A stretch of 64,000 bases of DNA from Auanema rhodensis (taxonomy: Eukaryota > Animalia > Nematoda): the NCBI GenBank assembly GCA_964057225.1, contig OZ059898.1:8184001-8248000 (forward strand). The letters are read 5' to 3'. Below are positions 34,260-46,538 of this stretch, one piece after another. The translations under genes were made by a program, and so were the position numbers. Position 1 is the first letter of the stretch, and the number at the start of each line of letters is the position of its first letter. The notes under the pieces were generated by a model. That model saw only the letters and a program-made list of their open reading frames with translations, searched no databases and was not told the origin of the DNA.

Positions 34260-34827
34260 TTATTTTTGCAGCTCAGAGTTTCTTAGTGCACTGAAATCAG
34301 TGGAGCCATGTTGTGCGTTGGGGTATGCCTATAAAGCTTGGGATTTCACGATTGCTTTGTAGCATGTATATACCTGGGGTTCAAAAGTTTGATTAGAATC
34401 ACTATCAAATGTAGTATGGTCTGGTTCCGAAAATCCAGTATTAGAGTCTTCATTACCACCGAAGAGAGGTGCAATAGGGTTGGTTGAGTCTATAACTCAA
34501 TACGTTTTTTGAACTACTATAATCTACAAACCCTGAGAATTGTCCTCTGCTGACTGAGCAGTATTACTGTTTTCTTCTTCTGTCATTGGCTTAACAGCCT
34601 TTGGAGCTATGCTCATTTGTGCTGTTACTGCACAATAAAATTTTAATTAGCTTAAAGAAGATGATATTACCTGGAACCCATTTTTGAATTTTGATCGAAG
34701 TATCCTTGATGAGAACCCATTTTTTCTCCCATTTTCTCACTTTTTCAATTGAATGTATAACTTTTCTTAACTCATCCTTAGTTCTATTTCTTGTTTCTGC
34801 TCTATGAGTTCTGGTGGCTGAATACAT
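34260..34827 (-). CDS. bcl-7: BCL7 family SWI/SNF subunit
   Basis: N-terminus [29 protein letters not shown]...KWVP is the BCL7 signature; exons 34827-34671, 34627-34532, 34489-34374, 34328-34260. Confidence 0.93.
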
Positions 34828-35147
34828 CTAAAAAAATTTTTTAGTAAAAGTTAATAATATTTAAGAAAAATACTCAATGTTGTTTATTTTTAAAACTATT
34901 GATAATGAATATGAAAACAAAATCCACAACACATAATAAACCAGCTATACTATCTACGGTTTGCATACCGCCGTGGCTTGTACGTTGTTTACAACGTCCC
35001 TTAGTAATGTCGTAGGGGGTAAATATTCAAACTTCAAATTTGGGACGTTATCTTAAATCATGCTGAAAGCTTTAATTAAAAAGTGTTTTTTATATATTAT
35101 AATGAACTATAGTTTATTATTTGTGTTTGATAATTTTTCATTTATAG
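34828..35147. promoter_or_regulatory. Compact bidirectional promoter between bcl-7 and the MPP10 locus
   Basis: 320 bp between divergent ATGs, each directly preceded by a T-rich TAG acceptor; inverted repeat ACGTTGT-tt-ACAACGT (34982-34997) containing TTGTTTAC; TTCAAA motifs. Confidence 0.6.
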
Positions 35148-38100
35148 ATGTCTTCGCGTATTCCGAGGCCAACAGCGGGTAAATCTTCTTCTGAACCAGA
35201 GAGGAGCAATTCTCAAAGTTCGAATGATTCAAGTCGGAGAACTTCGAGCAGATTAGCGGCTAAGGTGTGATAGTTAAATATATATATACAAATTTATTTC
35301 GAGTTATTAAGACTACTTCTCGTATCCCTGAACCAACGCGTACCCTTTCTCAAGCATCGGTCGCCAGCGTGTAAGTAGCCTTATCATATAGATCTATATA
35401 TGTATCCCTTCTATTCTCAGAGAATCAACCTCTTCCCAGGATGATTTTGTGAAACCCAAACGCACAGCTGCAAAAGTTTGTATTTTTCTTTTTAATAATT
35501 AAATTTTATTATTGTGTAGAATTGACTTTACTGGAAGTAAATAGTATACTTTCAAACTTATTCTTTACAAACTGAATTATTCGAAAAGATTGTTTACTAT
35601 CTTATAGGATCATTAGTTTATTTTAGGTCAGCCAGTCCAAAAAGGACGACATTAGTACCGATGATTCAGTTCCGAGGCCAAAAAGTCAAGGATCTACCAC
35701 TAAGGTTTGTCCTAAGCTTTCTTAAATCGAATTTATATTTCTTTAAGGATACTCGATCTTCTGAAGTAATAATTTCACCTGATGACGAAAAACCGATGGG
35801 AAGACCAAGAACACGTAGTTCTTCTAGAGTTTGTTTGCCCATAAAAAATATTACCGTGCGTGAAGTTGTAGGCTACTTCTGCTGCTCCGGAATCAACTGA
35901 TGTGTCTCCCGTATCTATAGGAAGATCACGCCGGTCTACTAGAGTGAGCATTTTATTTTTTGACTTGATATAAAATATTTCACCCATTGATTAATTAGAA
36001 ACAAAACATGCTTTACAAAAAAATATATGTGAATCACACATTGCCCTCCTGCTTTTTTTCTTCAAAGACTAGCATGCAAAGATGTTCATTTCTCTATTTA
36101 AAAAAAATTAAAAATAAATTCAAACTCTTGTACTTGATTGACCAATCACATTTGATGAAGTTTTTATTCTGCTAGATGTAATCTTGTTATGTAGCGTACA
36201 TCAGCTTTTCTTATTATCACATTTGTTTAGGCTAATTCAGTCATATCTGATACTAGCGATATTCCTGAAAATGTTTTTAACACTCCGAAAAAATCATCTT
36301 CAATTGATACACCTAAAAGTTCTCAGAGGAAATCTCGCGGTGCTTGTACGGTAAGACTTAGGTTTCTATAAGCATTTAACGTTTTCTATTTTCAGAATGT
36401 TGTAGAATTAGATGTAATTAATGAAGATGACGATATTGTTATATGTTCTCAAGTAATGTATTGTCAAATCCAGTTAAAGTATTTTTATATTTTAGGCTGA
36501 CTCCAATTTTAAAACTCCTCCAGTTTCTCCATCTCGATCTCGAAAATCTCAGAAAACTCCAACACCTACTAGAATGGTAAATTTCAAGAAATATTTTTAT
36601 AGTTTAAAAATTATTCAGGATTCATCTTCGCGACTTACTCGTTCCATGCGTAAGCGAGGAATTAATACTCCAGAAGATGAGTTCAAACCAGTTGATCCTG
36701 TTATTTGTTTTGAGAGCGACGATGAAGAAAAGGCTTCTAACTCACCCAAGAAAAATGTTGGTTATTTCTTACATAGAAAAAAAGTATTATATTTAAGGAT
36801 AACGATAATGATTCTGATGAAATGATCAAGGATTTTGTTGTAGTTCCTGGGCAATCTGTACCTGCTAAGAGTATTGATAATATAATCATAATTTTTCCTA
36901 ACTTTTTGAAATTAGTTTCACCTGTGAATACTCCAACCAAGAAACGGAACTCAATGCTGGTGAGAAATCTAACTAAAGCTCTCTTCACTCCTTTGGACTC
37001 ACCTAAGCCTCCAACCCAAATCATTGATAAAGCAGGAACTCCTTTGAACAGCAATACAGCTGCTAATGAAAATGATGAAAGCGATGATGCTATGGACTGG
37101 GAGCCTATTGTGAGTTACATCTTCAGCTTGACTTTTCAACTTTTTTCATTTTCAGCCATTAATAGATGAAGAAGTCGATTCAAAGCATAAGGTAGAGTTT
37201 TTTTTAAACTTATTTGCTCAGAAATAGTCATCTCCGCAGATGGCTGTTTCTAGATGCACCTGAAAAGTGTTTTGAAACTGAGAATCTTTTGAGAATGGTG
37301 AAAACGAAAAGAATTCTCTATGCCTTTATCAGTAGAAAGAAAAATTGATAGCCACGTAGTTAAATGCGAGAAATGTCCTCTATCTTAATCTGAATTTTTT
37401 CTATTTCTTTAAGAAGATAGTGTAAGTTTTTCCAAAAAAAAATGTCGCACAGGCTCTGGGTAGTTCTTCGTTCTACATAATGTTATTTGCAGAGTACAGT
37501 TGCTGAGTGTGATGCTGCAACTGTTGCTCCCGAATCGATAGAAAAACAACGACAAGTGACTGCTTCACAGGAAGATAAGCCCTCAAGTCCTGAAGTAGTT
37601 TTATTGAGCTTTCGACGAATTAATAGTTCATGTTTTTTTGCAGAGCGATGTTGAAATTATATCCCGTATTAGTCCTGTGAAATCACCCAGGAAGGAAACT
37701 TCTAAGAAGGAACCCTCCATGAAAAATACTCCTAAGAATGAATCCCTTAAAAAACATACACCTAAGAAGGAATCCCCTAAGAAAGATATTCACGAGTCTT
37801 CTAGGAAGAACGATTTAAAGGAATCTCCAAAAAAACTGTCTCCTAAGAAAGGTGCTGCTAAGGAAGTACATACAATGAATTCCAAAAATTTAGAAACTCT
37901 AGAAAAAGGTGCCTCTAAGATAGAAACACCAAAAAAGGAGACTCCCTTAAAGCAAACACAGAAGAAGGAGACTCCGGCTAAAACGCTAAATATTTCTTCT
38001 ACCTTACAAAGTATATCTACATGTGAAAAGGAAACTATGGTTTCCAAGGATGTTTGTGCCATTGGGGAAAATGGGAATAATGGTGTCCCAGCATCTAGTG

Positions 38101-38396
38101 TTGCTGGGGAGAAAAAGTCAGTACAGGATCAGATCTATGAACCAGATAATGATCATTCCTCAAAGGCCTCTAGCAAACCTTCAATAAATACCGCAGAAGA
38201 TATTAGTAATGAGCCTAATCCAGATCAAGATGATTTATCAGTGACTGAGGAGGTAAGCTGCGACATTTGTCGCAGAATCAATTAAATTTTTAAGAAAAAT
38301 GTGAGAGACAAAAACAAAATAAAGAAGAAGAAAAAGAAGGAGATAGCTTCAGCTGAGCAATCTGAATTGGCTGTTGAGCTTAAGAACGATAAAAAG
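35148..38396 (+). CDS. ~650 aa low-complexity Ser/Thr/Lys-rich region with SxIP and S/T-P-K-K motifs; probable N-terminal extension of MPP10
   Basis: About 16 short exons joined in frame from ATG 35148 (MSSRIPRPT...) through the SPKK-rich exon 37644-38251 to an AAG|GTTTGT donor at 38396, with no in-frame stop. Confidence 0.8.
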
Positions 38397-39138
38397 GTTT
38401 GTTTTGTTTTTCGTATTCCAGTTAATATTTTGTTTTCTCTATTACTTAAGTCTTTCTTAAAAGAATTATCGACTACCATGAGTGTCTGTGCCAGCCTTAT
38501 TGCTTGCTATTAGTATAGCAAGAGAGAGAGCCATTCTGCGTCTCTGCTGCTGCGTATATAGTCTGTCACTCTTGATTTGATACACTCTCTTCCAGTCAGT
38601 CGGCGTTGTCGACTGGGTTCCGCCTCTTGAATTCTCATGTGTTGTGTTGGTATCCTGCAGACTTTTCTTTTAAATTTATTGTATTTCTAATTATCATTTA
38701 GTTAGCCTAATCACCTCATTAGCACACAGAGTAAGACACAAACGCATCAGCTAGACGCGAAAGCAGTGCGTCCTCCATATTTGGCCAGTCCCTATCAAAC
38801 CCTTTCTCTCACGCATACTCACCGACAGACTAACCCAATTGATTTGCACCGTTTACCCCCAACACCATTTGCTTTTCATCTTGGTGTTCCGCGAAATAGG
38901 CTATAGATTATGTATAGTTCCATCGTTTTCTACTTTTTATTATGAGGCGCTTATATTCCATGCGTTTTATAAAATCTCGTACCAATCTATGTCTAATGAA
39001 TTGAGTCTATTCCCCACTCACCATCCTACAAGATCTGGCTGATCACGAAGGAGTGTACAACTGTGTTCCTTCAATTGATTTGCAATAGTTTCATAAAATT
39101 CTTTTCAAGTTATTGAACCGTGAGAAGTATGTACTGTC

Positions 39139-39142
39139 TATA

Positions 39143-39188
<46 letters not shown>
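39139..39188. repeat. (AT)n microsatellite
   Basis: Long AT run within the 2.6 kb intron. Confidence 0.9.
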
Positions 39189-39194
<6 letters not shown>

Positions 39195-40999
39195 TACATC
39201 TACATCTACCTACACATACATTGTGAGTGTGTCCGGTTTTTCAAATTATGTTTTCCTTATTTGCTTACGTTGTTGCTTCTGTCGTTCAGATTTTATGGCG
39301 TACATTCTGCTTTTTTTGAACTTAAGTTTATATGTTCGAATGTGGATCAACTATATCAAGTCATGTTCTACTTTTGCCTAGAATTTATTCGTATTATCCA
39401 TATTGATGATGTTCGTTAGGCTGCATCTGGATTTTTACGTGTGTTCATGACATATTGATAGGTTTATAAGGCATACTAGGTGCGATCCAACTATTTAAAA
39501 GATCGTGCGCGCATGTGGGCGATTTTGTCCTGAGTGCACTCGACCTTTCAACTGAACCGTTTCTACTAAGTTCACGCGAAGTATCACCCCAACTAGTTGG
39601 AATAGATAATGAATGAATAAAAATTAAATAATTTTAGCTAGTGGTACTACATAACTCTTAATCCTATCTTGTTCTAAATTTCTATCCTAGTTGTAAGGAG
39701 GGCTATACAATCGCATTATATATTAGTATGCATATTAATTGTCGATTTGTGGATCTATTTGATTTCTTCTTTATGTTTGTATAGGATTCTCTTGCCAATC
39801 AAAACCATCAACAAATTCAAAAGATTGTGTTGATTATACGTGGTGAAAAGGGATGACCAACAAACTTTCTCTCGTTTTGTATAACATCTGCAAATGTATT
39901 CACTTTTATTCACATGCTTCACGTATGAATCGAAAAGAAGGGGGACTACTACTACGTATGGATTCTAAGCGATTGACAATCAGACAGATTTTGATACGAT
40001 GTGTCAATTGGTGTTCGGGGATTGTTGGTGAGAAAGGGCGCTGCTGTTGCTGCTGTATGGCGGTGATGATGATGGTGGTTGGGGTGCTGGTAGTGTCTAT
40101 CCTTCTGTTTCTCTCTCACTTTCACTCTTACTCTCTGTCTCGCTCGCTCTGTGTGCCTGCTTGAAAACCTGTTGCATTTGCGCGATTTGCTCACCGCGTA
40201 TATACACCCACATCATAGGACACTAATCATATGCCTTCGTTTTCTTCATTTCACGTCGTCCAGCTTTTCTTTCTGATTTCGATCTTTATCGATTAGTATA
40301 TCATGATATATCCGAGAAAAATAAAAGAAGGACAAATAGATTATTCACAAGACCAATTAAACTATTTTTCTTTTGTAGCAATTTACTGAACTTGGTTCAA
40401 GACTATTACAAGCTTCCATGATTTTATACTACTAGGCTTGCGTTGTTTACGAACGTTGAGTAGTAGATCGGAAGAAAAGAAACCGGTTCACTTAGTTATT
40501 CTGCTGCCGTCATAATCGATTAATATTATTGTAGATAATTTTTGGTCCGTTTATGAATTTGGATAGCGCTCTGTTGTCAGCGTTTTTTTATATTCGTTTG
40601 AGTTTTATCATTCATCGTTATCGTTCATTCACTTCGGTGCATGTGCTTTTTCATTTTTCGCTGCTGGTCGAAGGCCTTTCATGTTAGCTTAGGTGCTGAT
40701 TTGATTTGTTCAATCGATTACTATCGTCCAACACTAAAAAAAGTATCTCTAGGCTCTTATGTTGAGAAAAGCTGCTTTGTCAGAATGTTTCTTTGGGTTT
40801 AGCTTTACTTTTAACATGAACTTTCTTAAACGCTTAATATTAATTTTCTGTTTTGACTGGGCACTTGTTCCAGTTAGAGTTGTTCAAAATTTGGGAATTT
40901 GTTCATTTGCATTACTATTTTGATCTGTTTTCTATTTCTATTCTATCGAGAGTTTTCTCTTATTTTTCCCAATTAAATAATTGACATAGTTGTTTCTAG

Positions 41000-43633
41000 G
41001 GTAAGAAAGCTACTGCACTGTCTGTTCAAAGCGGTGACGAAGAAGATCTCGTCGATCCAGCACAGGACGACGAGAAGAAAGATAATGGATTCTATGCGGA
41101 AGTAACTTTCAAAAGTCTCTTCAAGAAGTGAGTTATCAGCTTCTACTCATTTTTCGTTTTTGATCAATAATGTTTTGCAATTCAATTGCTATCTTCTTCA
41201 TTCGTTTGTTTTCACGTTTTATGTGTGTCGTTTTGCAGACCTATTACAACTGAGAAAAAGATTAACCAGACTCTTGCTGAGCTCTATACTTGGACGTGTA
41301 AGCTGAGAAAACGAAAGAATGATCTTTGTGATGTTTTTCTCAATGACCAAACTGAAACAATATGGCAGCAAATCTCTCACAAGAATATACAACTCTTCAA
41401 AACCTACAAAAAATATAATGTTTGTTCATTTTTTTTGCCTTTTTTATTTCACCAATGCCCTTCCATTTTAGTCGCTACTAGACGAAAAGATTGAGTTAAT
41501 CAATCAAGAAGAAAAATGTGAAGACGATGAAGATGAGGAGGATATTGAGGATGAAGAGTTTGTAGATGATGAGGAAGATATGGATGAAGATGAGGAAGAG
41601 GAAGAAGCTGATTTATTCAATTTGAAGTAAGTGTTTGAAAATTTGAATGTATATAAAAGTTTTAATTTACAGAGGTGAAGATCTCGCTGATCTTGAGAAG
41701 AAATTAGAGCAGGGAGAAGATAGCGAAGATGACGATGAATCTTCAAAAGCACCTAAGAAAAAGTTTCCTAAGAGTCCAGTTGATGACAAATTCTTCAAGT
41801 ATACTTTTGATTCAAAATTAAACCTTCTTTATTTTGTTTCAGTCTTGCTGAAATGGATGCTTTCTTGGATGAAGCTGAAAAGCAAACTGATAATGATGAT
41901 GGACTTTTGCTCACTACTGATGTAAGCTTAATAGTGCTTTATATAGTTGTAACATTTGTTGTTTAGGATAATTGGGGTGGACCTGCTGATTACAAGTATG
42001 AAGACTTTTTCGGAAAGTTAGACAATGTAGTAGAAGGCGGATCTAAGAAAGAAAAGAAGCCTAAAAAACGCTCCCGTGAAAATGAAACTGACGAATCTAG
42101 GTAATGCTATTGGCAATAGTTCATAACCTACTTTTGATTATATTTGATATATTTTCTCTGTTCACATAGCAACTTGTTCATTAACCAACTTATTACAGCC
42201 TTCCAAAAAAAAAGAAGTCAGTTCGTTGGATGGACGAGCAGGAAGCGGCCGAAGATGAGGATGAGGACGAAGACGTAGATGATGATGCAGAAGTAGAGGA
42301 TGAAGAAGTTGAAGATGGCCCAGTTTTACTTGGTGAGCAAGCTGAGGAAGATGAGGAGCCAAAGACAAAGCTTAGGCAAAACTTGAAAAAGGTACTCTAT
42401 CCAAAAAGTCATTAAAAAAATTCTGGTATATTTTAGTTGAAAGAAACTATACAAAAGATAGAAGAAGAAAATCTTCAACCTAGATCTTGGGAACTTAGCG
42501 GAGAAGTTTCTGCTGTTCAAAGATCAGAAAATGAGCTTTTGGAAAAACATCTAGATTTTGAACGTGGAATGAAAAAAGGTAAGATACATTCTACTTTGTA
42601 TTGTTGTTTATCTTTATTGTTTTAAAGCTCCTGAAGTGAATGAAGATTTTACTGAAAAATTGGAATCTATCATTCTTCAAAGAATCAAGGACAATGTAAG
42701 TTGTACCATACGCTTTTTTCTGAAACAGTTTGACACTTCCAGGTCTTTGATGATGTTGTTAGAAAGAAGAAGGTCGAAGAACGTGTTGAAGATTATAGAA
42801 ATGAGGCTATCGAAGAAAGAGAAATGGTTAAAAAATCACTTTCTGAAGTCTACGAGAAAGAGTATCAACAAGCTGCTGGGGTTTGTTTAAATGTGTAATA
42901 TCTTTTGAAAAAGTTTTTATAGGAAGTTGAGAAGGATAAGCCTAATGAGCTACATGTCTCGATTAAAAATAGCATCAAAGATCTTTTCCGTCTTATCGAT
43001 GCTCTCTCACATAACGAATACACTCCACCTGAGGTTGGATTAAATTCTTCTAATATAATTTTTAACTTGAACTTTTCAGGTTCGACCAGAAGTTCGTGTT
43101 GTTTCTAATATGGATGCTCTACGAGTCGAAGAAGTCGGTATTATGGCATCTACCGATTCTCAATTGTTAGCACCAGAAGAAGTGAAAAAGAGAGAAAAGG
43201 GCGATATCAAGGTATCAAAATCTTATCAAAATGTTACATTGCATACGTCTGTAGGCTGACGATGAAAGAACAACCACCGACAAGTTGCGTCAAAGACGCA
43301 AAAAGAAAATGAAGCAGAGGTATTTTTCTTTTCCATTTTTTTATCATTTTCTGATCTATCAGAGCTATGGTCATGGTTATGGGAGATACGAAGACGGTTG
43401 ATGAAGGTGAAAAGAAGAAAAAGAAAAAGAATGAGGATGAAGGAGCTAGTCTTAAGAGCAGCAACTTCTTTAATCAATTGCAAGAAACTGTCCAAAAGGT
43501 ATGATTTCGCAACAATAACACAACATTATTCGTTTCTCCTTTTTTTTAGGAATTGAAAGAGAAGACTAGTAAGAAGAAGAAGATGAAGTCAGAAAATGTT
43601 TCTTCCAGTGGCGGATCTAAATTCAAACTATAA
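41000..43633 (+). CDS. MPP10: U3 snoRNP protein MPP10 (MPHOSPH10) core
   Basis: Motifs ETIWQQI, KSPVDDKFF-SLAEMDAFLDE, WELSGEV..QRSENELLEKHLDF, LESIILQRIKD..FDDV, KKSLSEVYEKEY, LIDALSHNEYTP, LLAPEE, C-terminal SKFKL*. Confidence 0.95.
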
Positions 43634-43954
43634 AGCTGGTTAGGTTATTTTGTCCATAATACGTTTAATGTGATGCAATTTGTTATTCGTTTTTGGTATG
43701 CTACAAATTAGCTCAATTTATTGTTTCTTGTTATTGTTATTGTTATATGTTTATCTTGTTGAATTCATGCAAACCTTTTTTCTTTGAATGTTTTACAATT
43801 TGGGTCTTCCAACCCTTGAATACTTTTTGCAACTTGTCATCTCAAGTTGTTTCCGATTTCAATTTTATTTTGTTTTTTACATGCATTTTTTCCAGTTGCA
43901 GGGTTTTGACCAGCTGTGCCCAGTCTTTTTGCTTTTTAATTCTAATAGTGTATA

Positions 43955-46538
43955 ATGTATTCTGGGGCTGGACCCGGACAATATGCTCAACCTCCTATGA
44001 GTGCTGGTATGGGTGGACCTATGGTTCAACAAGGTTCCCAGCCCAATCAGATGCCTCCTCATATGGCAATGCAGCAAAACCATCCTGTTCAGCAGCCAAG
44101 GATGGTATATTGGTCTTTGAACTTGCTCTTTAGTTTATATTCGATTTCCAGATGATGCAACAGCCTCACATGCAGGGTGTTCCTGGTGGAATGAGGCCTC
44201 CTTATGCTCAACCGGCGATGATGGCTCAGCGTAAGTATTATTAAAATAAGTACATTTTAACTTTTTGTGTTATAGATGGCATGGTTAACATGTATGGACA
44301 ACCTCAGATGCCGTCCATGAGAGTTAATCAGAATGAAATGTATGTTTCATGCCGAATATATTTCAATGTACTCTGAATTTGATTAGGTATAATCGTTTTC
44401 CTCATGATTGGAAACAACAAGGACCAATACCTAAGGAAACTGCTCCTGAAAAACGCCATAAGACTATGAACTATGCTAAGGTGCTCTTTCAATTTGTATT
44501 AGTGTAATTCCGGCATGTTTAGATTCAACAACAGCAACAACAGCAGCAGCAGCATCAACAAATAGCTAACCGGGCTATTGGACAACATCCTTGTAAGTTC
44601 AATTTTTAAAGCTCTTTTTTCTACAATATGTTATAGATAACACCCCGCAACATATGATGCCTCCAAACAGAGCTCATCCAATGTATCCAAACCCAGGAAG
44701 TAATATGCAGCAAATGTCTCATCCAAGTGTGCCACTTCATCCGCCGTCTCAACAACCGCATACCATGTAATTTATTAATCAGTTGACTTATAGTTTATTT
44801 TTTATATATAGCACCAACAGGAGAATGATACCTAACTCTATGCATGGAAACATTCCACAGAACCTACAGCCTAGCATGCATACTACAATGGCATCTTCGC
44901 CTTCCGCTCCGGGAGTAGGAATTGCTTCTGGCTCTACTGGCATGCCAACCACTCAATCTACCTCAACTGTTCAAAGACCTATGCCCAGTCCTCAGGTCAC
45001 TGCATTTGCTACGAATACGGCTCCTTCTGGATCGCCAGGTTCAGCTATGAATGCCAACCCTGGGTCTGCACCTTCTCCACAGATTTCACAAAATCTACCA
45101 CTGCATACTCGTAAGTTGTCTCCATTGTTTGTCATTGTGTTATTACTGTCCTTATAGAGCCTGTAATGAAACCGACAGGAGCACCCGACCCAGAGTATGA
45201 ACAGCTAAAAAACGAAATGAAAGAGAAATATTACGAACAGTTAAAGAGAGTGGGAGATAGATGCACTTTAGATAATTGTCCGAAGCCACGTGGTTTCACA
45301 CAACTCATGGAGATCTTCGAAGCGAAGAGGTATCTAAATATATATTATTGAACTATTCGTTATCTTATTCTTATTAAAGGGATGTTAACTTTAAACTTCT
45401 TACTATCGTACGCGAACAACTCATTGGTGTCTTGGAGAAATACTCCTTGTCTTATGATGTTATGAGCGAAGTTAAGAAGATGCATAAGGAAATTTCTGAC
45501 TGCAAGCCAGCCAGTGAGTTTTTGGAATAGAAGTATTTTTCCTAACTCTTATCATAAAGGTGCTCCTGCTTCTATGAATTCTGGAGCACATGATCCTTGG
45601 AAACCTGTTCGGCATAAGTTCATCAAGTGCGTTCTTAATTTAATATTTTTTTTAATTTTTTCCTCAAATAGAGTTCCTGATGATATCATGAAGCTTATTT
45701 CGGATGATGAGACATCTTCTGCAAAAGCTGAAAAACGTCATTTGAATGCTGATTCTGATGACGCTCCTCCGACAAAAGCTGCTAAGATAGAAATAGGTAT
45801 TTTTTCTTCTCAAAGATGTTTTTATTTTTTGTCCTTTCTTAGATGGCGCAGCCACTGTTCACAGCTTTTCTCAATCCGCTAGTGGTATAAATGCTATTCG
45901 TCGCTTTTCTCGTCGAGTGGCCAGCACCGATGATGAAGAAGCTGGAAGTAGATTGTCCTCTGAAGAAGGTGTTAAACAAATTGAAATCGAATGCCTTTTC
46001 GACCAAACTCGTAAATGGGTTATGTCGACGACAGCATCAGCTGAGTTACAACATATCCCTTGGAGAATAGAGAGAGATGCCCTTCCTCCATCTTTCCGTA
46101 GTCCAGACGTTATTTTGTCATTTGATTCCTTAACTGTAAGTGTTTTTGTTAAATTTATCTTTATAACATATATTTTAAGCTTTCTTGTCATCCTCTCCTT
46201 GTACTTGTACCACAAACTTATCCACTCGATTCTCCTGTTATTCAATTTGATAAATCGTTCCCTAGCGGAGCTCCGCTTTCGAAACAACTCTCAATGGTTT
46301 GCTTTCACTGTTTTTTTTATTTATGTATCTCCTCTTCAGATATTCGAGAGGTGTCTCTCTTTGGCTTCTTCGCGGTCTTTAACATGCATATATGAAGCTT
46401 TTCGTTCTGCTTGTGAGGAGTTGGTCAAGCTAAAGGTATGCTTCAACATTTCACTCATATCTTTAAACTTTGCTTTAGGGCGTGCTTAACGGGCACTATA
46501 TACCCAGTAAACACCAGCAAAAACAACTTGTTGCTTAA
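43955..46538 (+). CDS. Q/P/M-rich protein with MED15-like middle and C-terminal domains, no KIX domain
   Basis: Prion-like N-half (QQQQ, MPPH); helical EYEQLKNEMKEKYYEQLKR; C-terminal HPLLVLVPQTYPLDSP and SRSLTCIYEAFRSAC resemble MED15 PPLxLxVPxxYPxxSP and S(V/I)TxxLxxW; ends KQLVA*. Confidence 0.65.

What the first reader, a model, noticed from the sequence alone, without database searches (positions are those of the whole stretch)
35148..43633. MPP10 appears fused to a ~650-aa disordered SxIP/CDK-site N-terminal extension
Seen: the exon chain from ATG 35148 has no stop up to a phase-0 donor at 38396. The first MPP10 exon (41000, GKKATALSVQ...) is phase 0 and has no ATG, and the first in-frame Met lies after the conserved IWQQ motif, so MPP10 needs an upstream exon. 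Known: yeast and human MPP10 are ~600-700 aa and begin shortly before that motif; MPP10 is an M-phase phosphoprotein of the U3 snoRNP. Inference: a protein of about twice the normal length linking the pre-rRNA processome to mitotic chromatin or microtubules, possibly a Ki-67-like perichromosomal tether.
Basis: partly seen in the sequence, partly recalled or inferred. Interest (0 to 1): 0.75.

Follow-up and report, generated by a model that had tools for sequence, protein, structure and literature searches.

The report
Long-form nematode MPP10 gene
This worm's ribosome-assembly gene MPP10 most likely carries an extra, floppy 673-residue front half, but many other roundworms have gene models with the same long form, so it is the usual nematode layout (missing in the C. 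elegans group), not a one-off fusion.

Summary
Fifteen GT-AG exons from ATG 35148 give 673 open codons that end at a strong phase-0 donor (38396). MPP10 (Pfam PF04006) runs from 41000 to the stop at 43631-43633 in 15 more exons. Its first exon follows an in-frame TAG and has no ATG. The first in-frame Met lies 56 residues after IWQQ. No plausible ATG exon or extra exon lies in the 2,603-bp gap.

Comparative evidence supports it:
- Long MPP10 models (about 900-1,360 aa) exist in hookworms, Trichostrongylus, Haemonchus, Pristionchus, Panagrellus, ascarids, filariae and C. auriculariae.
- In Toxocara and Wuchereria one single exon runs from the disordered extension into the conserved MPP10 start.
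- The window's extension shares three short motifs with these proteins, in the same order, and the BCL7/Med15 neighbours.
- Strongylid orthologues also lack a Met before IWQQ.

Verdict: probably one 1,296-aa protein (about 0.78). It is real but not novel, because it is the ancestral nematode form, truncated in crown Caenorhabditis. The SxIP motifs are not conserved and no Ki-67-like features were found. What the extension does is unknown.

The parts
35148..38396 (+). N-terminal extension: 15 coding exons, 673 codons, disordered Ser/Lys/Pro-rich. Exons: 35148-35264, 35312-35370, 35421-35475, 35627-35704, 35748-35828, 35872-35943, 36231-36350, 36396-36452, 36496-36576, 36619-36756, 36798-37109, 37156-37191, 37493-37594, 37644-38252, 38295-38396
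   Evidence: Open frame across canonical GT-AG introns of 41-301 nt. No Pfam hit. Composition.
35235..35255 (+). Motif RRTSSRL (residues 30-36), shared near the N-terminus of other long nematode MPP10s
   Evidence: Present in 7 of 12 extensions (the window, Pristionchus, Panagrellus, Parascaris, Toxocara, Setaria, Wuchereria). A composition-preserving shuffle gives it in 0.1-0.6% of trials per sequence. The pattern was defined after seeing the data.
35154..35165 (+). First SRIP (SxIP-type) motif; the second is at 35318-35329
   Evidence: Present in the window, but among 12 other extensions only one SxIP-type match was found (SKIP in Necator), so it is not conserved.
36628..36672 (+). Motif SRLTRSMRKRGINTP (residues 244-258)
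   Evidence: Matches (S/A)RITRAMR(K/R)AG..TP in Ancylostoma, Necator, Trichostrongylus and Haemonchus, the close variant SRITRSMTRAG in P0270, and RVTRSM in C. auriculariae.
37092..37103 (+). Motif MDWE (residues 385-388)
   Evidence: Also found in the extensions of A. ceylanicum, P. pacificus and C. auriculariae, in the same relative order.
37671..37982 (+). Block of SPKK/TPKK-type repeats, which are CDK-consensus [ST]Px[KR] sites
   Evidence: The extension has 14 full-consensus sites, 10 of them in this block. Weak BLAST match to the SPKK block of P. pacificus P0034 (E 3e-4 in a small local database).
38253..38294 (+). Intron 14. If retained, the frame stops at 38283-38285. AATAAA lies at 38318-38323, inside the next exon
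   Evidence: This leaves room for an extension-only isoform.
38397..40999 (+). Junction intron, 2,603 nt, the only long intron of 29. It contains a (TA)n tract at 39131-39213
   Evidence: Donor score 11.2 (top of range), acceptor score 5.3 (weakest). No good ATG exon and no phase-0 internal exon inside. Only low-complexity Rfam noise. The homologous intron is 16.8 kb in T. colubriformis and over 11 kb in N. americanus. The splice itself was not observed.
41000..41127 (+). First MPP10 exon (42 codons + 2 nt). Phase 0, no ATG, in-frame TAG immediately upstream
   Evidence: It aligns with the conserved N-terminal block of orthologues. The homologous phase-0 acceptor is present in N. americanus, T. 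colubriformis, C. auriculariae and P. pacificus.
41000..43633 (+). MPP10 part: 15 exons, 623 codons + TAA. Exons: 41000-41127, 41239-41419, 41472-41626, 41673-41798, 41843-41921, 41967-42100, 42199-42391, 42437-42578, 42628-42695, 42743-42880, 42923-43033, 43080-43211, 43255-43319, 43363-43498, 43550-43633
   Evidence: Pfam PF04006 on four exons. BLASTP 48-58% identity to strongylid MPP10 along the whole length.
34591..34827 (-). Neighbour: BCL7 N-terminal exon, head-to-head with ATG 35148, 320 nt away
   Evidence: Pfam BCL_N at 90 bits. The same head-to-head neighbour flanks the long MPP10 gene of P. pacificus.
45190..46447 (+). Neighbour: Med15 (mediator subunit) gene downstream of MPP10
   Evidence: tblastn with the Med15 parts of P0267 and P0007. 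The same order is seen in C. briggsae and N. americanus.

Best explanation
One gene, 35148-43633 on the + strand, has 30 exons and encodes a long-form MPP10 of about 1,296 aa. The first 673 residues are an intrinsically disordered, Ser/Lys/Pro-rich extension. It carries short linear motifs: an N-terminal RRTSSRL, SRLTRSMRKRGINTP, MDWE and a block of SPKK/TPKK CDK-type sites. The donor at 38396 (or the equally good phase-0 donor at 38252) is cis-spliced over a 2.6-kb intron to the acceptor at 41000. That joins the extension to a canonical MPP10, the scaffold of the U3 snoRNP / small-subunit processome.

This is the ancestral layout of chromadorean nematodes. In crown Caenorhabditis the extension is gone, and the mRNA starts at the acceptor that is homologous to the junction acceptor.

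Shown here: both reading frames, the lack of a start codon for a stand-alone MPP10, the shared motifs and synteny, and the single-exon fusion in clade III species.

Inferred: the splice itself in this species, and the function. My best guess for the function (about 0.3) is a phospho-regulated nucleolar or chromatin-association tail. It would concentrate MPP10 at rDNA or on chromosome surfaces, through basic SPKK-type DNA contacts and the arginine-rich N-terminal motif.
For: - Exon chains and phases.
- No in-frame ATG before IWQQ; TAG directly before 41000.
- Donor 38396 scores 11.2, at the top of the range of the 28 donors used to build the scoring matrix (38396 itself was not among them). No competing ATG exon (best 7.8, a hydrophobic nonsense peptide) and no extra internal exon in the gap.
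- Long MPP10 models in 10 or more nematode genera.
- Toxocara exon L007:7626-8642 (339 codons) and Wuchereria exon L008:1877-2536 (220 codons) each run from the extension into the conserved MPP10 N-terminal block, so the fusion there needs no predicted splice.
- The strongylid long forms also have no Met between the junction and IWQQ.
- Three motifs are shared in the same order.
- BCL7(-)/gene(+) synteny with P. pacificus and Med15 downstream.
- The junction acceptor is phase 0 in five species. C. auriculariae has ...|KSKSAN and C. briggsae has MAKSKSKN at the same spot.
- Runs X1-X4 hold 0.34-0.41 of the sampled words of 35100-43700. That is close to the exon share of both halves together (0.45) and above either half alone (about 0.23). 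This is weak and indirect.
Against: - No read or transcript of this species was seen.
- The junction intron is 8.6 times longer than any other intron, and its acceptor is the weakest of all.
- Gene models at this locus are known to over-fuse: MPP10+Med15 in P0007, P0016, P0149 and P0267.
- In P. pacificus the first MPP10 exon starts with ATG right after its acceptor, so a separate short mRNA is possible there.
- Retention of intron 14 would give a stop at 38283, followed by AATAAA at 38318.
- Sequence similarity of the extension outside the short motifs is not significant.
Confidence: 0.78

Rival explanations
1. There are two separate genes. A disordered-protein gene ends near 38285-38513, by read-through of the donor at 38252 or 38396. 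MPP10 is then transcribed from the 2.6-kb gap, with a small ATG exon that was not recognised. The fused models in other species would be annotation artefacts.
For: - The gap is the single long 'intron' and its acceptor is weak.
- A stop at 38283 plus AATAAA at 38318 would appear if intron 14 is kept.
- The gap is even longer in strongylids.
- Short models also exist for hookworms and Nippostrongylus.
- Over-fusion with Med15 shows that gene predictors do merge neighbours here.
- One candidate ATG exon, 40641-40682, has a donor score of 7.8.
Against: - The candidate exon encodes a hydrophobic nonsense peptide, and nothing else in the gap scores well.
- Both donors of the upstream chain are phase 0 and top-scoring, i.e. 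built to splice onward.
- Four strongylid orthologues also lack any Met in the conserved N-terminal block.
- In Toxocara and Wuchereria the two parts are one exon with no stop between them.
- The nematode spliced leader does not supply an AUG (own knowledge; the variant leader noted for this genome ends in GAG).
Confidence: 0.15
2. There is a mixed output. The fused long mRNA exists, but the locus also makes an extension-only isoform (intron 14 retained, poly(A) after 38318). It may also make a leader-trans-spliced RNA starting at 41000, which would be untranslatable or would start at Met 140 of the MPP10 part.
For: - The stop and AATAAA arrangement.
- Acceptors after long introns can be trans-spliced in nematodes (own knowledge).
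- P. pacificus has ATG directly after the homologous acceptor.
- Crown Caenorhabditis uses that acceptor as the 5' end of the mRNA.
Against: No transcript data. A 41000-start RNA has an out-of-frame upstream ATG at 41086 (six codons, then a stop) and would lose the conserved IWQQ block.
Confidence: 0.3
3. The missing start codon reflects an assembly error or a decaying MPP10 copy, not a fusion.
For: None beyond the missing ATG.
Against: All 30 exons are open with canonical splice sites. The MPP10 part is full length and collinear with orthologues right to the C-terminal ...SKFKL. MPP10 is an essential single-copy gene (own knowledge).
Confidence: 0.03

Closest known systems
Predicted long-form MPP10 proteins of other nematodes: Ancylostoma ceylanicum Y032_0021g447 (1,284 aa), Necator americanus RB195_008728 (1,285 aa), Pristionchus pacificus PRIPAC_95008 (1,213 aa), Panagrellus redivivus A0A7E4VF42 (1,226 aa), Parascaris univalens A0A915AP86 (1,314 aa), Toxocara canis VDM39721.1 (1,190 aa), Wuchereria bancrofti VDM10283.1 (925 aa)
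   Same: A disordered extension of 300-740 aa sits in front of a complete MPP10. Total length is nearly identical to the hookworm proteins (1,296 vs 1,284/1,285 aa). The RR[ST]xRL, (S/A)R(L/I)TR(S/A)M and MDWE motifs are shared in the same order. The junction intron is phase 0. BCL7 and Med15 are the neighbours.
   Different: Outside the motifs the extension has diverged beyond detection. The two SRIP motifs are particular to the window. The junction intron is absent in clade III, 174 nt in Pristionchus, 2.6 kb here and over 11 kb in strongylids. None of these proteins has been studied, and I found no paper on them.
Canonical MPP10 / MPHOSPH10 (yeast Mpp10, human MPHOSPH10, crown Caenorhabditis; about 600-700 aa)
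   Same: The C-terminal 623 residues match Pfam PF04006 and align along their whole length, including the IWQQ block, VDDKFF, the PRSWELSGEV region and the basic tail.
   Different: The canonical proteins start 20-80 residues before IWQQ with their own Met. A Caenorhabditis transcript contig has an in-frame stop just before that Met. The window has no such start and has 673 extra residues.
HMGN nucleosome-binding core motif RRSARLSA (recalled from memory, used only as a lead)
   Same: The shared N-terminal motif (RRTSSRL here, RRTSARL in Pristionchus, RRSRRL in filariae) looks like the arginine-anchor core of HMGN proteins.
   Different: No hit to the Pfam HMGN family even at E up to 10, although HMMER's filters drop most matches above about 0.1. 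Seven residues cannot establish homology, and binding was not tested.
Ki-67
   Same: Long, basic and disordered, with many CDK-type sites. Human MPP10 is itself an M-phase phosphoprotein (own knowledge).
   Different: Pfam reported no family at all for the extension (FHA and Ki-67 repeats included); a PP1-docking RVxF motif was not searched for. Net charge and CDK-site density are not conserved among the nematode extensions: pI ranges from 4.8 to 9.4, and there are 2-35 full sites.

Membership tests
MPP10 (Pfam PF04006, U3 snoRNP / SSU processome scaffold) | Match to the Mpp10 profile above the gathering score (29.9 bits) | tested here: met
   Single exons score 53.5, 39.5 and 46.3 bits (plus one at 26.1) at profile positions 297-498.
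MPP10 (Pfam PF04006, U3 snoRNP / SSU processome scaffold) | Full-length collinearity with orthologues, including the N-terminal IWQQ block and the C-terminal basic tail | tested here: met
   BLASTP 54% identity over 607 aa to A. duodenale, E 3e-173; 41-58% to the other nematode proteins in the table. Alignment.
MPP10 (Pfam PF04006, U3 snoRNP / SSU processome scaffold) | Association with U3 snoRNA, Imp3 and Imp4 | not testable with these tools
   Needs biochemistry.
Long-form nematode MPP10 | A disordered N-terminal extension with the shared motifs RR[ST]xRL, (S/A)R(L/I)TR(S/A)M and MDWE, in that order | tested here: met
   Residues 30, 244 and 385 of the window chain. Counterparts are listed; shuffle control.
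Long-form nematode MPP10 | The extension and MPP10 lie in one reading frame of one mRNA | tested here: inconclusive
   The frames are compatible and no alternative start exists, but the splice 38396^41000 was not observed. It is shown within a single exon only for Toxocara and Wuchereria.
Long-form nematode MPP10 | Conserved neighbours (BCL7 head-to-head upstream, Med15 downstream) | tested here: met
Nematode operon (two cistrons, downstream gene trans-spliced) | The upstream cistron ends in a stop and poly(A) signal; the downstream cistron has an acceptor followed by its own ATG | tested here: not met
   There is no in-frame ATG after the acceptor at 41000 for 140 codons, and the first ATG (41086) opens a 6-codon out-of-frame ORF. 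The upstream chain has a stop only if an intron is retained.
SxIP microtubule plus-end tracking proteins | An SxIP motif in a basic Ser-rich context, conserved among orthologues | tested here: inconclusive
   There are two SRIP motifs in the first 45 residues, but 11 of 12 other extensions have none. EB1 binding is not testable here.
HMGN nucleosome-binding domain | Match to the HMGN family profile | tested here: not met
   No hit for ten motif-bearing fragments at E up to 10. Only a 7-residue resemblance remains.
Ki-67-like perichromosomal proteins | FHA domain, PP1-docking site, Ki-67 repeats, C-terminal chromatin-binding region | tested here: not met
   No Pfam family was detected in the window extension exons scanned or in ten orthologous extensions. 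The short PP1-docking motif was not searched for.

The most novel reading that the evidence does not exclude
The extension is an ancestral nematode chromatin or nucleolus anchor for the small-subunit processome. An HMGN-like arginine motif at its tip and SPKK-type DNA contacts would hold MPP10 on rDNA chromatin or on the mitotic chromosome surface, and CDK phosphorylation would release it. The C. elegans lineage lost the extension when the acceptor of the junction intron became the 5' end of the mRNA. That would explain why the module has gone unnoticed in the model worm.
Probability: 0.12. Interest if true: 0.6.

Novelty: new member of a known kind. Interest (0 to 1): 0.33.

Why it matters
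MPP10 is an essential, highly conserved ribosome-assembly factor. Most nematodes, including major parasites, appear to make it with a lineage-specific disordered front half of 300-740 residues that C. elegans lacks. Work in the model worm therefore cannot say what this half does. For annotation, the practical lessons are these. The MPP10 gene of this genome should be modelled from ATG 35148. The short hookworm models with invented one-codon first exons are probably wrong. The MPP10+Med15 fusions are over-predictions. The comparison also gives a clean example of how a nematode gene can be truncated at an intron acceptor.

Tried and rejected
- Read evidence. The look-up of sequencing runs gave four runs from one study. 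After that, no stretch holding those places was sent to any search tool. Only local scripts read the whole window file, for exon mapping and for tblastn with the window as subject.
- Proteins of the window's own species. None turned up in three word searches or in the exhaustive search, so no transcript contig could be fetched.
- Metagenome scans. Scans for the spliced junction and for the start of exon 41000 found nothing. This is uninformative, because the species is not in that collection.
- Alternative start exon or extra exons in the gap. None was convincing.
- RNA genes and repeats in the gap. Only (TA)n noise was found.
- Domains in the extension. Pfam gave nothing, for the window or for ten orthologues, and the HMGN idea was not supported by the profile. 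The ESM Atlas gave nothing.
- Literature. No paper on nematode MPP10 extensions was found.
- Remnants in C. briggsae. Neither remnants of the extension nor BCL7 were found in the 8 kb upstream of C. briggsae MPP10.
- Genomic loci of the long hookworm models P0268 and P0269 were not on record.

Full report
**What is in the window.** The region is nematode genomic DNA, about 35% G+C, with short introns. It has 15 exons with canonical GT-AG borders and 673 codons without a stop, and it ends at the phase-0 donor AAG|GTTTGT at 38396. The product is strongly disordered by composition: S 15.6%, K 11.9%, P 8.3%, almost no aromatic residues, GRAVY -1.08, pI 8.9. It has 26 S/T-P sites, 14 of them full CDK-consensus sites, and two SRIP motifs in the first 45 residues. 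It has no Pfam match.

From 41000 to the TAA at 43631-43633, 15 further exons encode 623 residues of MPP10. Four exons hit Pfam PF04006 at 26-53 bits. The whole protein is 48-58% identical to strongylid MPP10 along its length. Exon 41000 is phase 0, is preceded by an in-frame TAG, and has no ATG. IWQQ is residue 84 of this part and the first in-frame Met is residue 140.

**Is the join real here?** I could not see it. Four runs from one study hold 0.34-0.41 of the sampled words of 35100-43700. That is close to the exon share of both halves together (0.45) and above either half alone, which fits co-expression but proves nothing. I sent no stretch containing those places to any search tool afterwards.

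The species' own proteins are not in the protein collections, and metagenome scans for the junction and for exon 41000 were empty. So the argument rests on sequence logic and comparison.

A splice-site matrix built from the other 28 introns gave these results:
- The donor at 38396 scores 11.2, the top of the range. The donor at 38252, also phase 0, scores the same.
- The acceptor at 41000 scores 5.3, the weakest of all.
- The best alternative ATG exon in the 2,603-bp gap scores 7.8 and encodes a hydrophobic nonsense peptide.
- No internal phase-0 exon passes modest thresholds.

The gap holds only a (TA)n tract and no RNA family. It is the one long intron among 29; the others are 41-301 nt.

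**Relatives.** An exhaustive search with one MPP10 exon, followed by word searches, showed two length classes among nematodes.

Short forms, about 620-650 aa:
- Crown Caenorhabditis. A Logan transcript contig has an in-frame stop just before the ATG.
- Some older strongylid gene models.

Long forms:

| Species | Length (aa) |
|---|---|
| A. ceylanicum | 1,284 |
| N. americanus | 1,285 |
| T. colubriformis | extension + MPP10 + Med15 |
| H. contortus | 996 |
| P. pacificus | 1,213 / 1,235 |
| Panagrellus | 1,226 |
| Parascaris | 1,313-1,361 |
| Toxocara | 1,190 |
| Setaria / Wuchereria / Elaeophora | 910-936 |
| C. auriculariae | extension of about 440 aa |

A tree of the MPP10 part places the window inside clade V, outside both the strongylids and Caenorhabditis.

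**The key comparative result.** I mapped proteins onto their genomic loci.
- In Toxocara, one 1,017-nt exon (L007:7626-8642, 339 codons) runs from the disordered extension straight into the conserved MPP10 N-terminal block.
- In Wuchereria, one 660-nt exon (L008:1877-2536, 220 codons) does the same.

In those species the fusion is a plain uninterrupted reading frame and does not depend on a predicted splice.

In clade V an extra phase-0 intron sits 28-45 codons upstream of a universally conserved intron. Its length is:
- 174 nt in Pristionchus,
- 981 nt in C. auriculariae,
- 2.6 kb in the window,
- 16.8 kb in Trichostrongylus,
- over 11 kb in Necator.

An unusually long junction intron is thus a shared trait of the window and the strongylids, although it is also what two separate genes would look like. 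Against the two-gene reading, the four strongylid long forms, like the window, have no Met anywhere between the junction and IWQQ.

**Orthology of the extension.** Overall similarity is not significant, as expected for disordered sequence. Three short motifs recur in the same order.
- RR[ST]xRL near the N-terminus. It is RRTSSRL at residue 30 in the window, and it is present in 7 of 12 extensions. A composition-preserving shuffle produces it in 0.1-0.6% of trials per sequence. The pattern was defined after seeing the data.
- SRLTRSM(RKRGINTP). Strongylids have (S/A)RITRAMR(K/R)AG..TP and C. auriculariae has RVTRSM.
- MDWE, also present in A. ceylanicum, P. pacificus and C. auriculariae.

Synteny agrees. 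A BCL7 N-terminal exon (Pfam, 90 bits) lies head-to-head 320 nt upstream of ATG 35148, exactly as in the P. pacificus locus. Med15 follows MPP10, as in C. briggsae and N. americanus.

**How Caenorhabditis became short.** C. auriculariae has the junction exon starting ...|KSKSAN. C. briggsae has tttttcag|GGTAAAAA followed by ATG and MAKSKSKN at the same place. The window has tag|GGTAAGAAA at its junction acceptor. The short Caenorhabditis mRNA therefore begins at the acceptor homologous to the junction acceptor. This fits loss of the upstream exons and reuse of that acceptor as the 5' end. No remnant of the extension or of BCL7 lies within 8 kb upstream in C. briggsae.

**Cautions.**
- Gene predictors clearly over-fuse at this locus: MPP10+Med15 in C. 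bovis, C. auriculariae, Necator and Trichostrongylus.
- In P. pacificus the first MPP10 exon begins with ATG just after its acceptor, and the upstream donor, if unspliced, meets a stop after three codons.
- In the window, retention of intron 14 gives a stop at 38283, with AATAAA at 38318.
- A Logan transcript contig that the tree places, with modest support, among clade III nematodes shows an MPP10 ATG 59 nt after the stop of another reading frame.

Extension-only or short isoforms therefore cannot be excluded.

**Function.** Nothing here tests it. SxIP motifs are not conserved: there was one match in the 12 other extensions. CDK-site density varies from 2 to 35 full sites, and pI from 4.8 to 9.4. 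No Pfam family of Ki-67, HMGN or anything else is found, and the ESM Atlas gave nothing. The conserved RR[ST]xRL motif resembles the HMGN nucleosome-binding core as I recall it, which is a lead only. My working guess is a phospho-regulated nucleolar or chromatin-association tail, at about 0.3.

**Verdict.** The fused 1,296-aa reading is probably right (0.78). It is the common nematode form that already sits unremarked in the sequence databases, and I found no paper on it. It is a new member of a known kind, of modest interest.

Noticed in passing
window 34591-34827 (-): A BCL7-family N-terminal exon (Pfam BCL_N, 90 bits) lies head-to-head with the long MPP10 gene, 320 nt from its ATG. The two genes probably share a divergent promoter, and the same arrangement is seen in Pristionchus pacificus (L001).
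   Followed up: partly
window about 43955-46447 (+): A Gln-rich Med15 (mediator subunit) gene follows directly after MPP10. The MPP10-Med15 order is kept in C. briggsae and N. americanus, and several public gene models wrongly merge the two genes (P0007, P0016, P0149, P0267).
   Followed up: partly
window 38283-38323: If intron 14 (38253-38294) is retained, the frame stops at 38283, and an AATAAA lies at 38318 inside the next exon. This could give an extension-only isoform.
   Followed up: no
window 39131-39213: A (TA)n / (CATCTA)n microsatellite in the long intron produces weak hits to several microRNA families, all well below their gathering scores. These are low-complexity artefacts.
   Followed up: yes
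L009:1-200 (Logan contig SRR12141609_6445): An RNA-derived contig, placed by the tree with modest support among clade III nematodes, carries the end of another reading frame (stop at 133-135) only 59 nt before the MPP10 ATG. This may be a polycistronic precursor or a split version of the long gene.
   Followed up: partly
L001:6556-6740 (P. pacificus): The first MPP10 exon of P. pacificus starts with ATG immediately after its acceptor (ttccag|ATG). The upstream donor, if unspliced, meets a stop after three codons. That layout would allow both a fused mRNA and a separate short mRNA.
   Followed up: partly
L003:10001-10003 (N. americanus, older assembly): The older 825-aa Necator model begins with a one-codon exon (ATG|GTAAAA) 1.4 kb upstream of the real first MPP10 exon. 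This looks like a predictor's fix for the missing start codon.
   Followed up: no
They lie in intron 6 of the extension, and nothing in the analysis depends on them.
   Followed up: no
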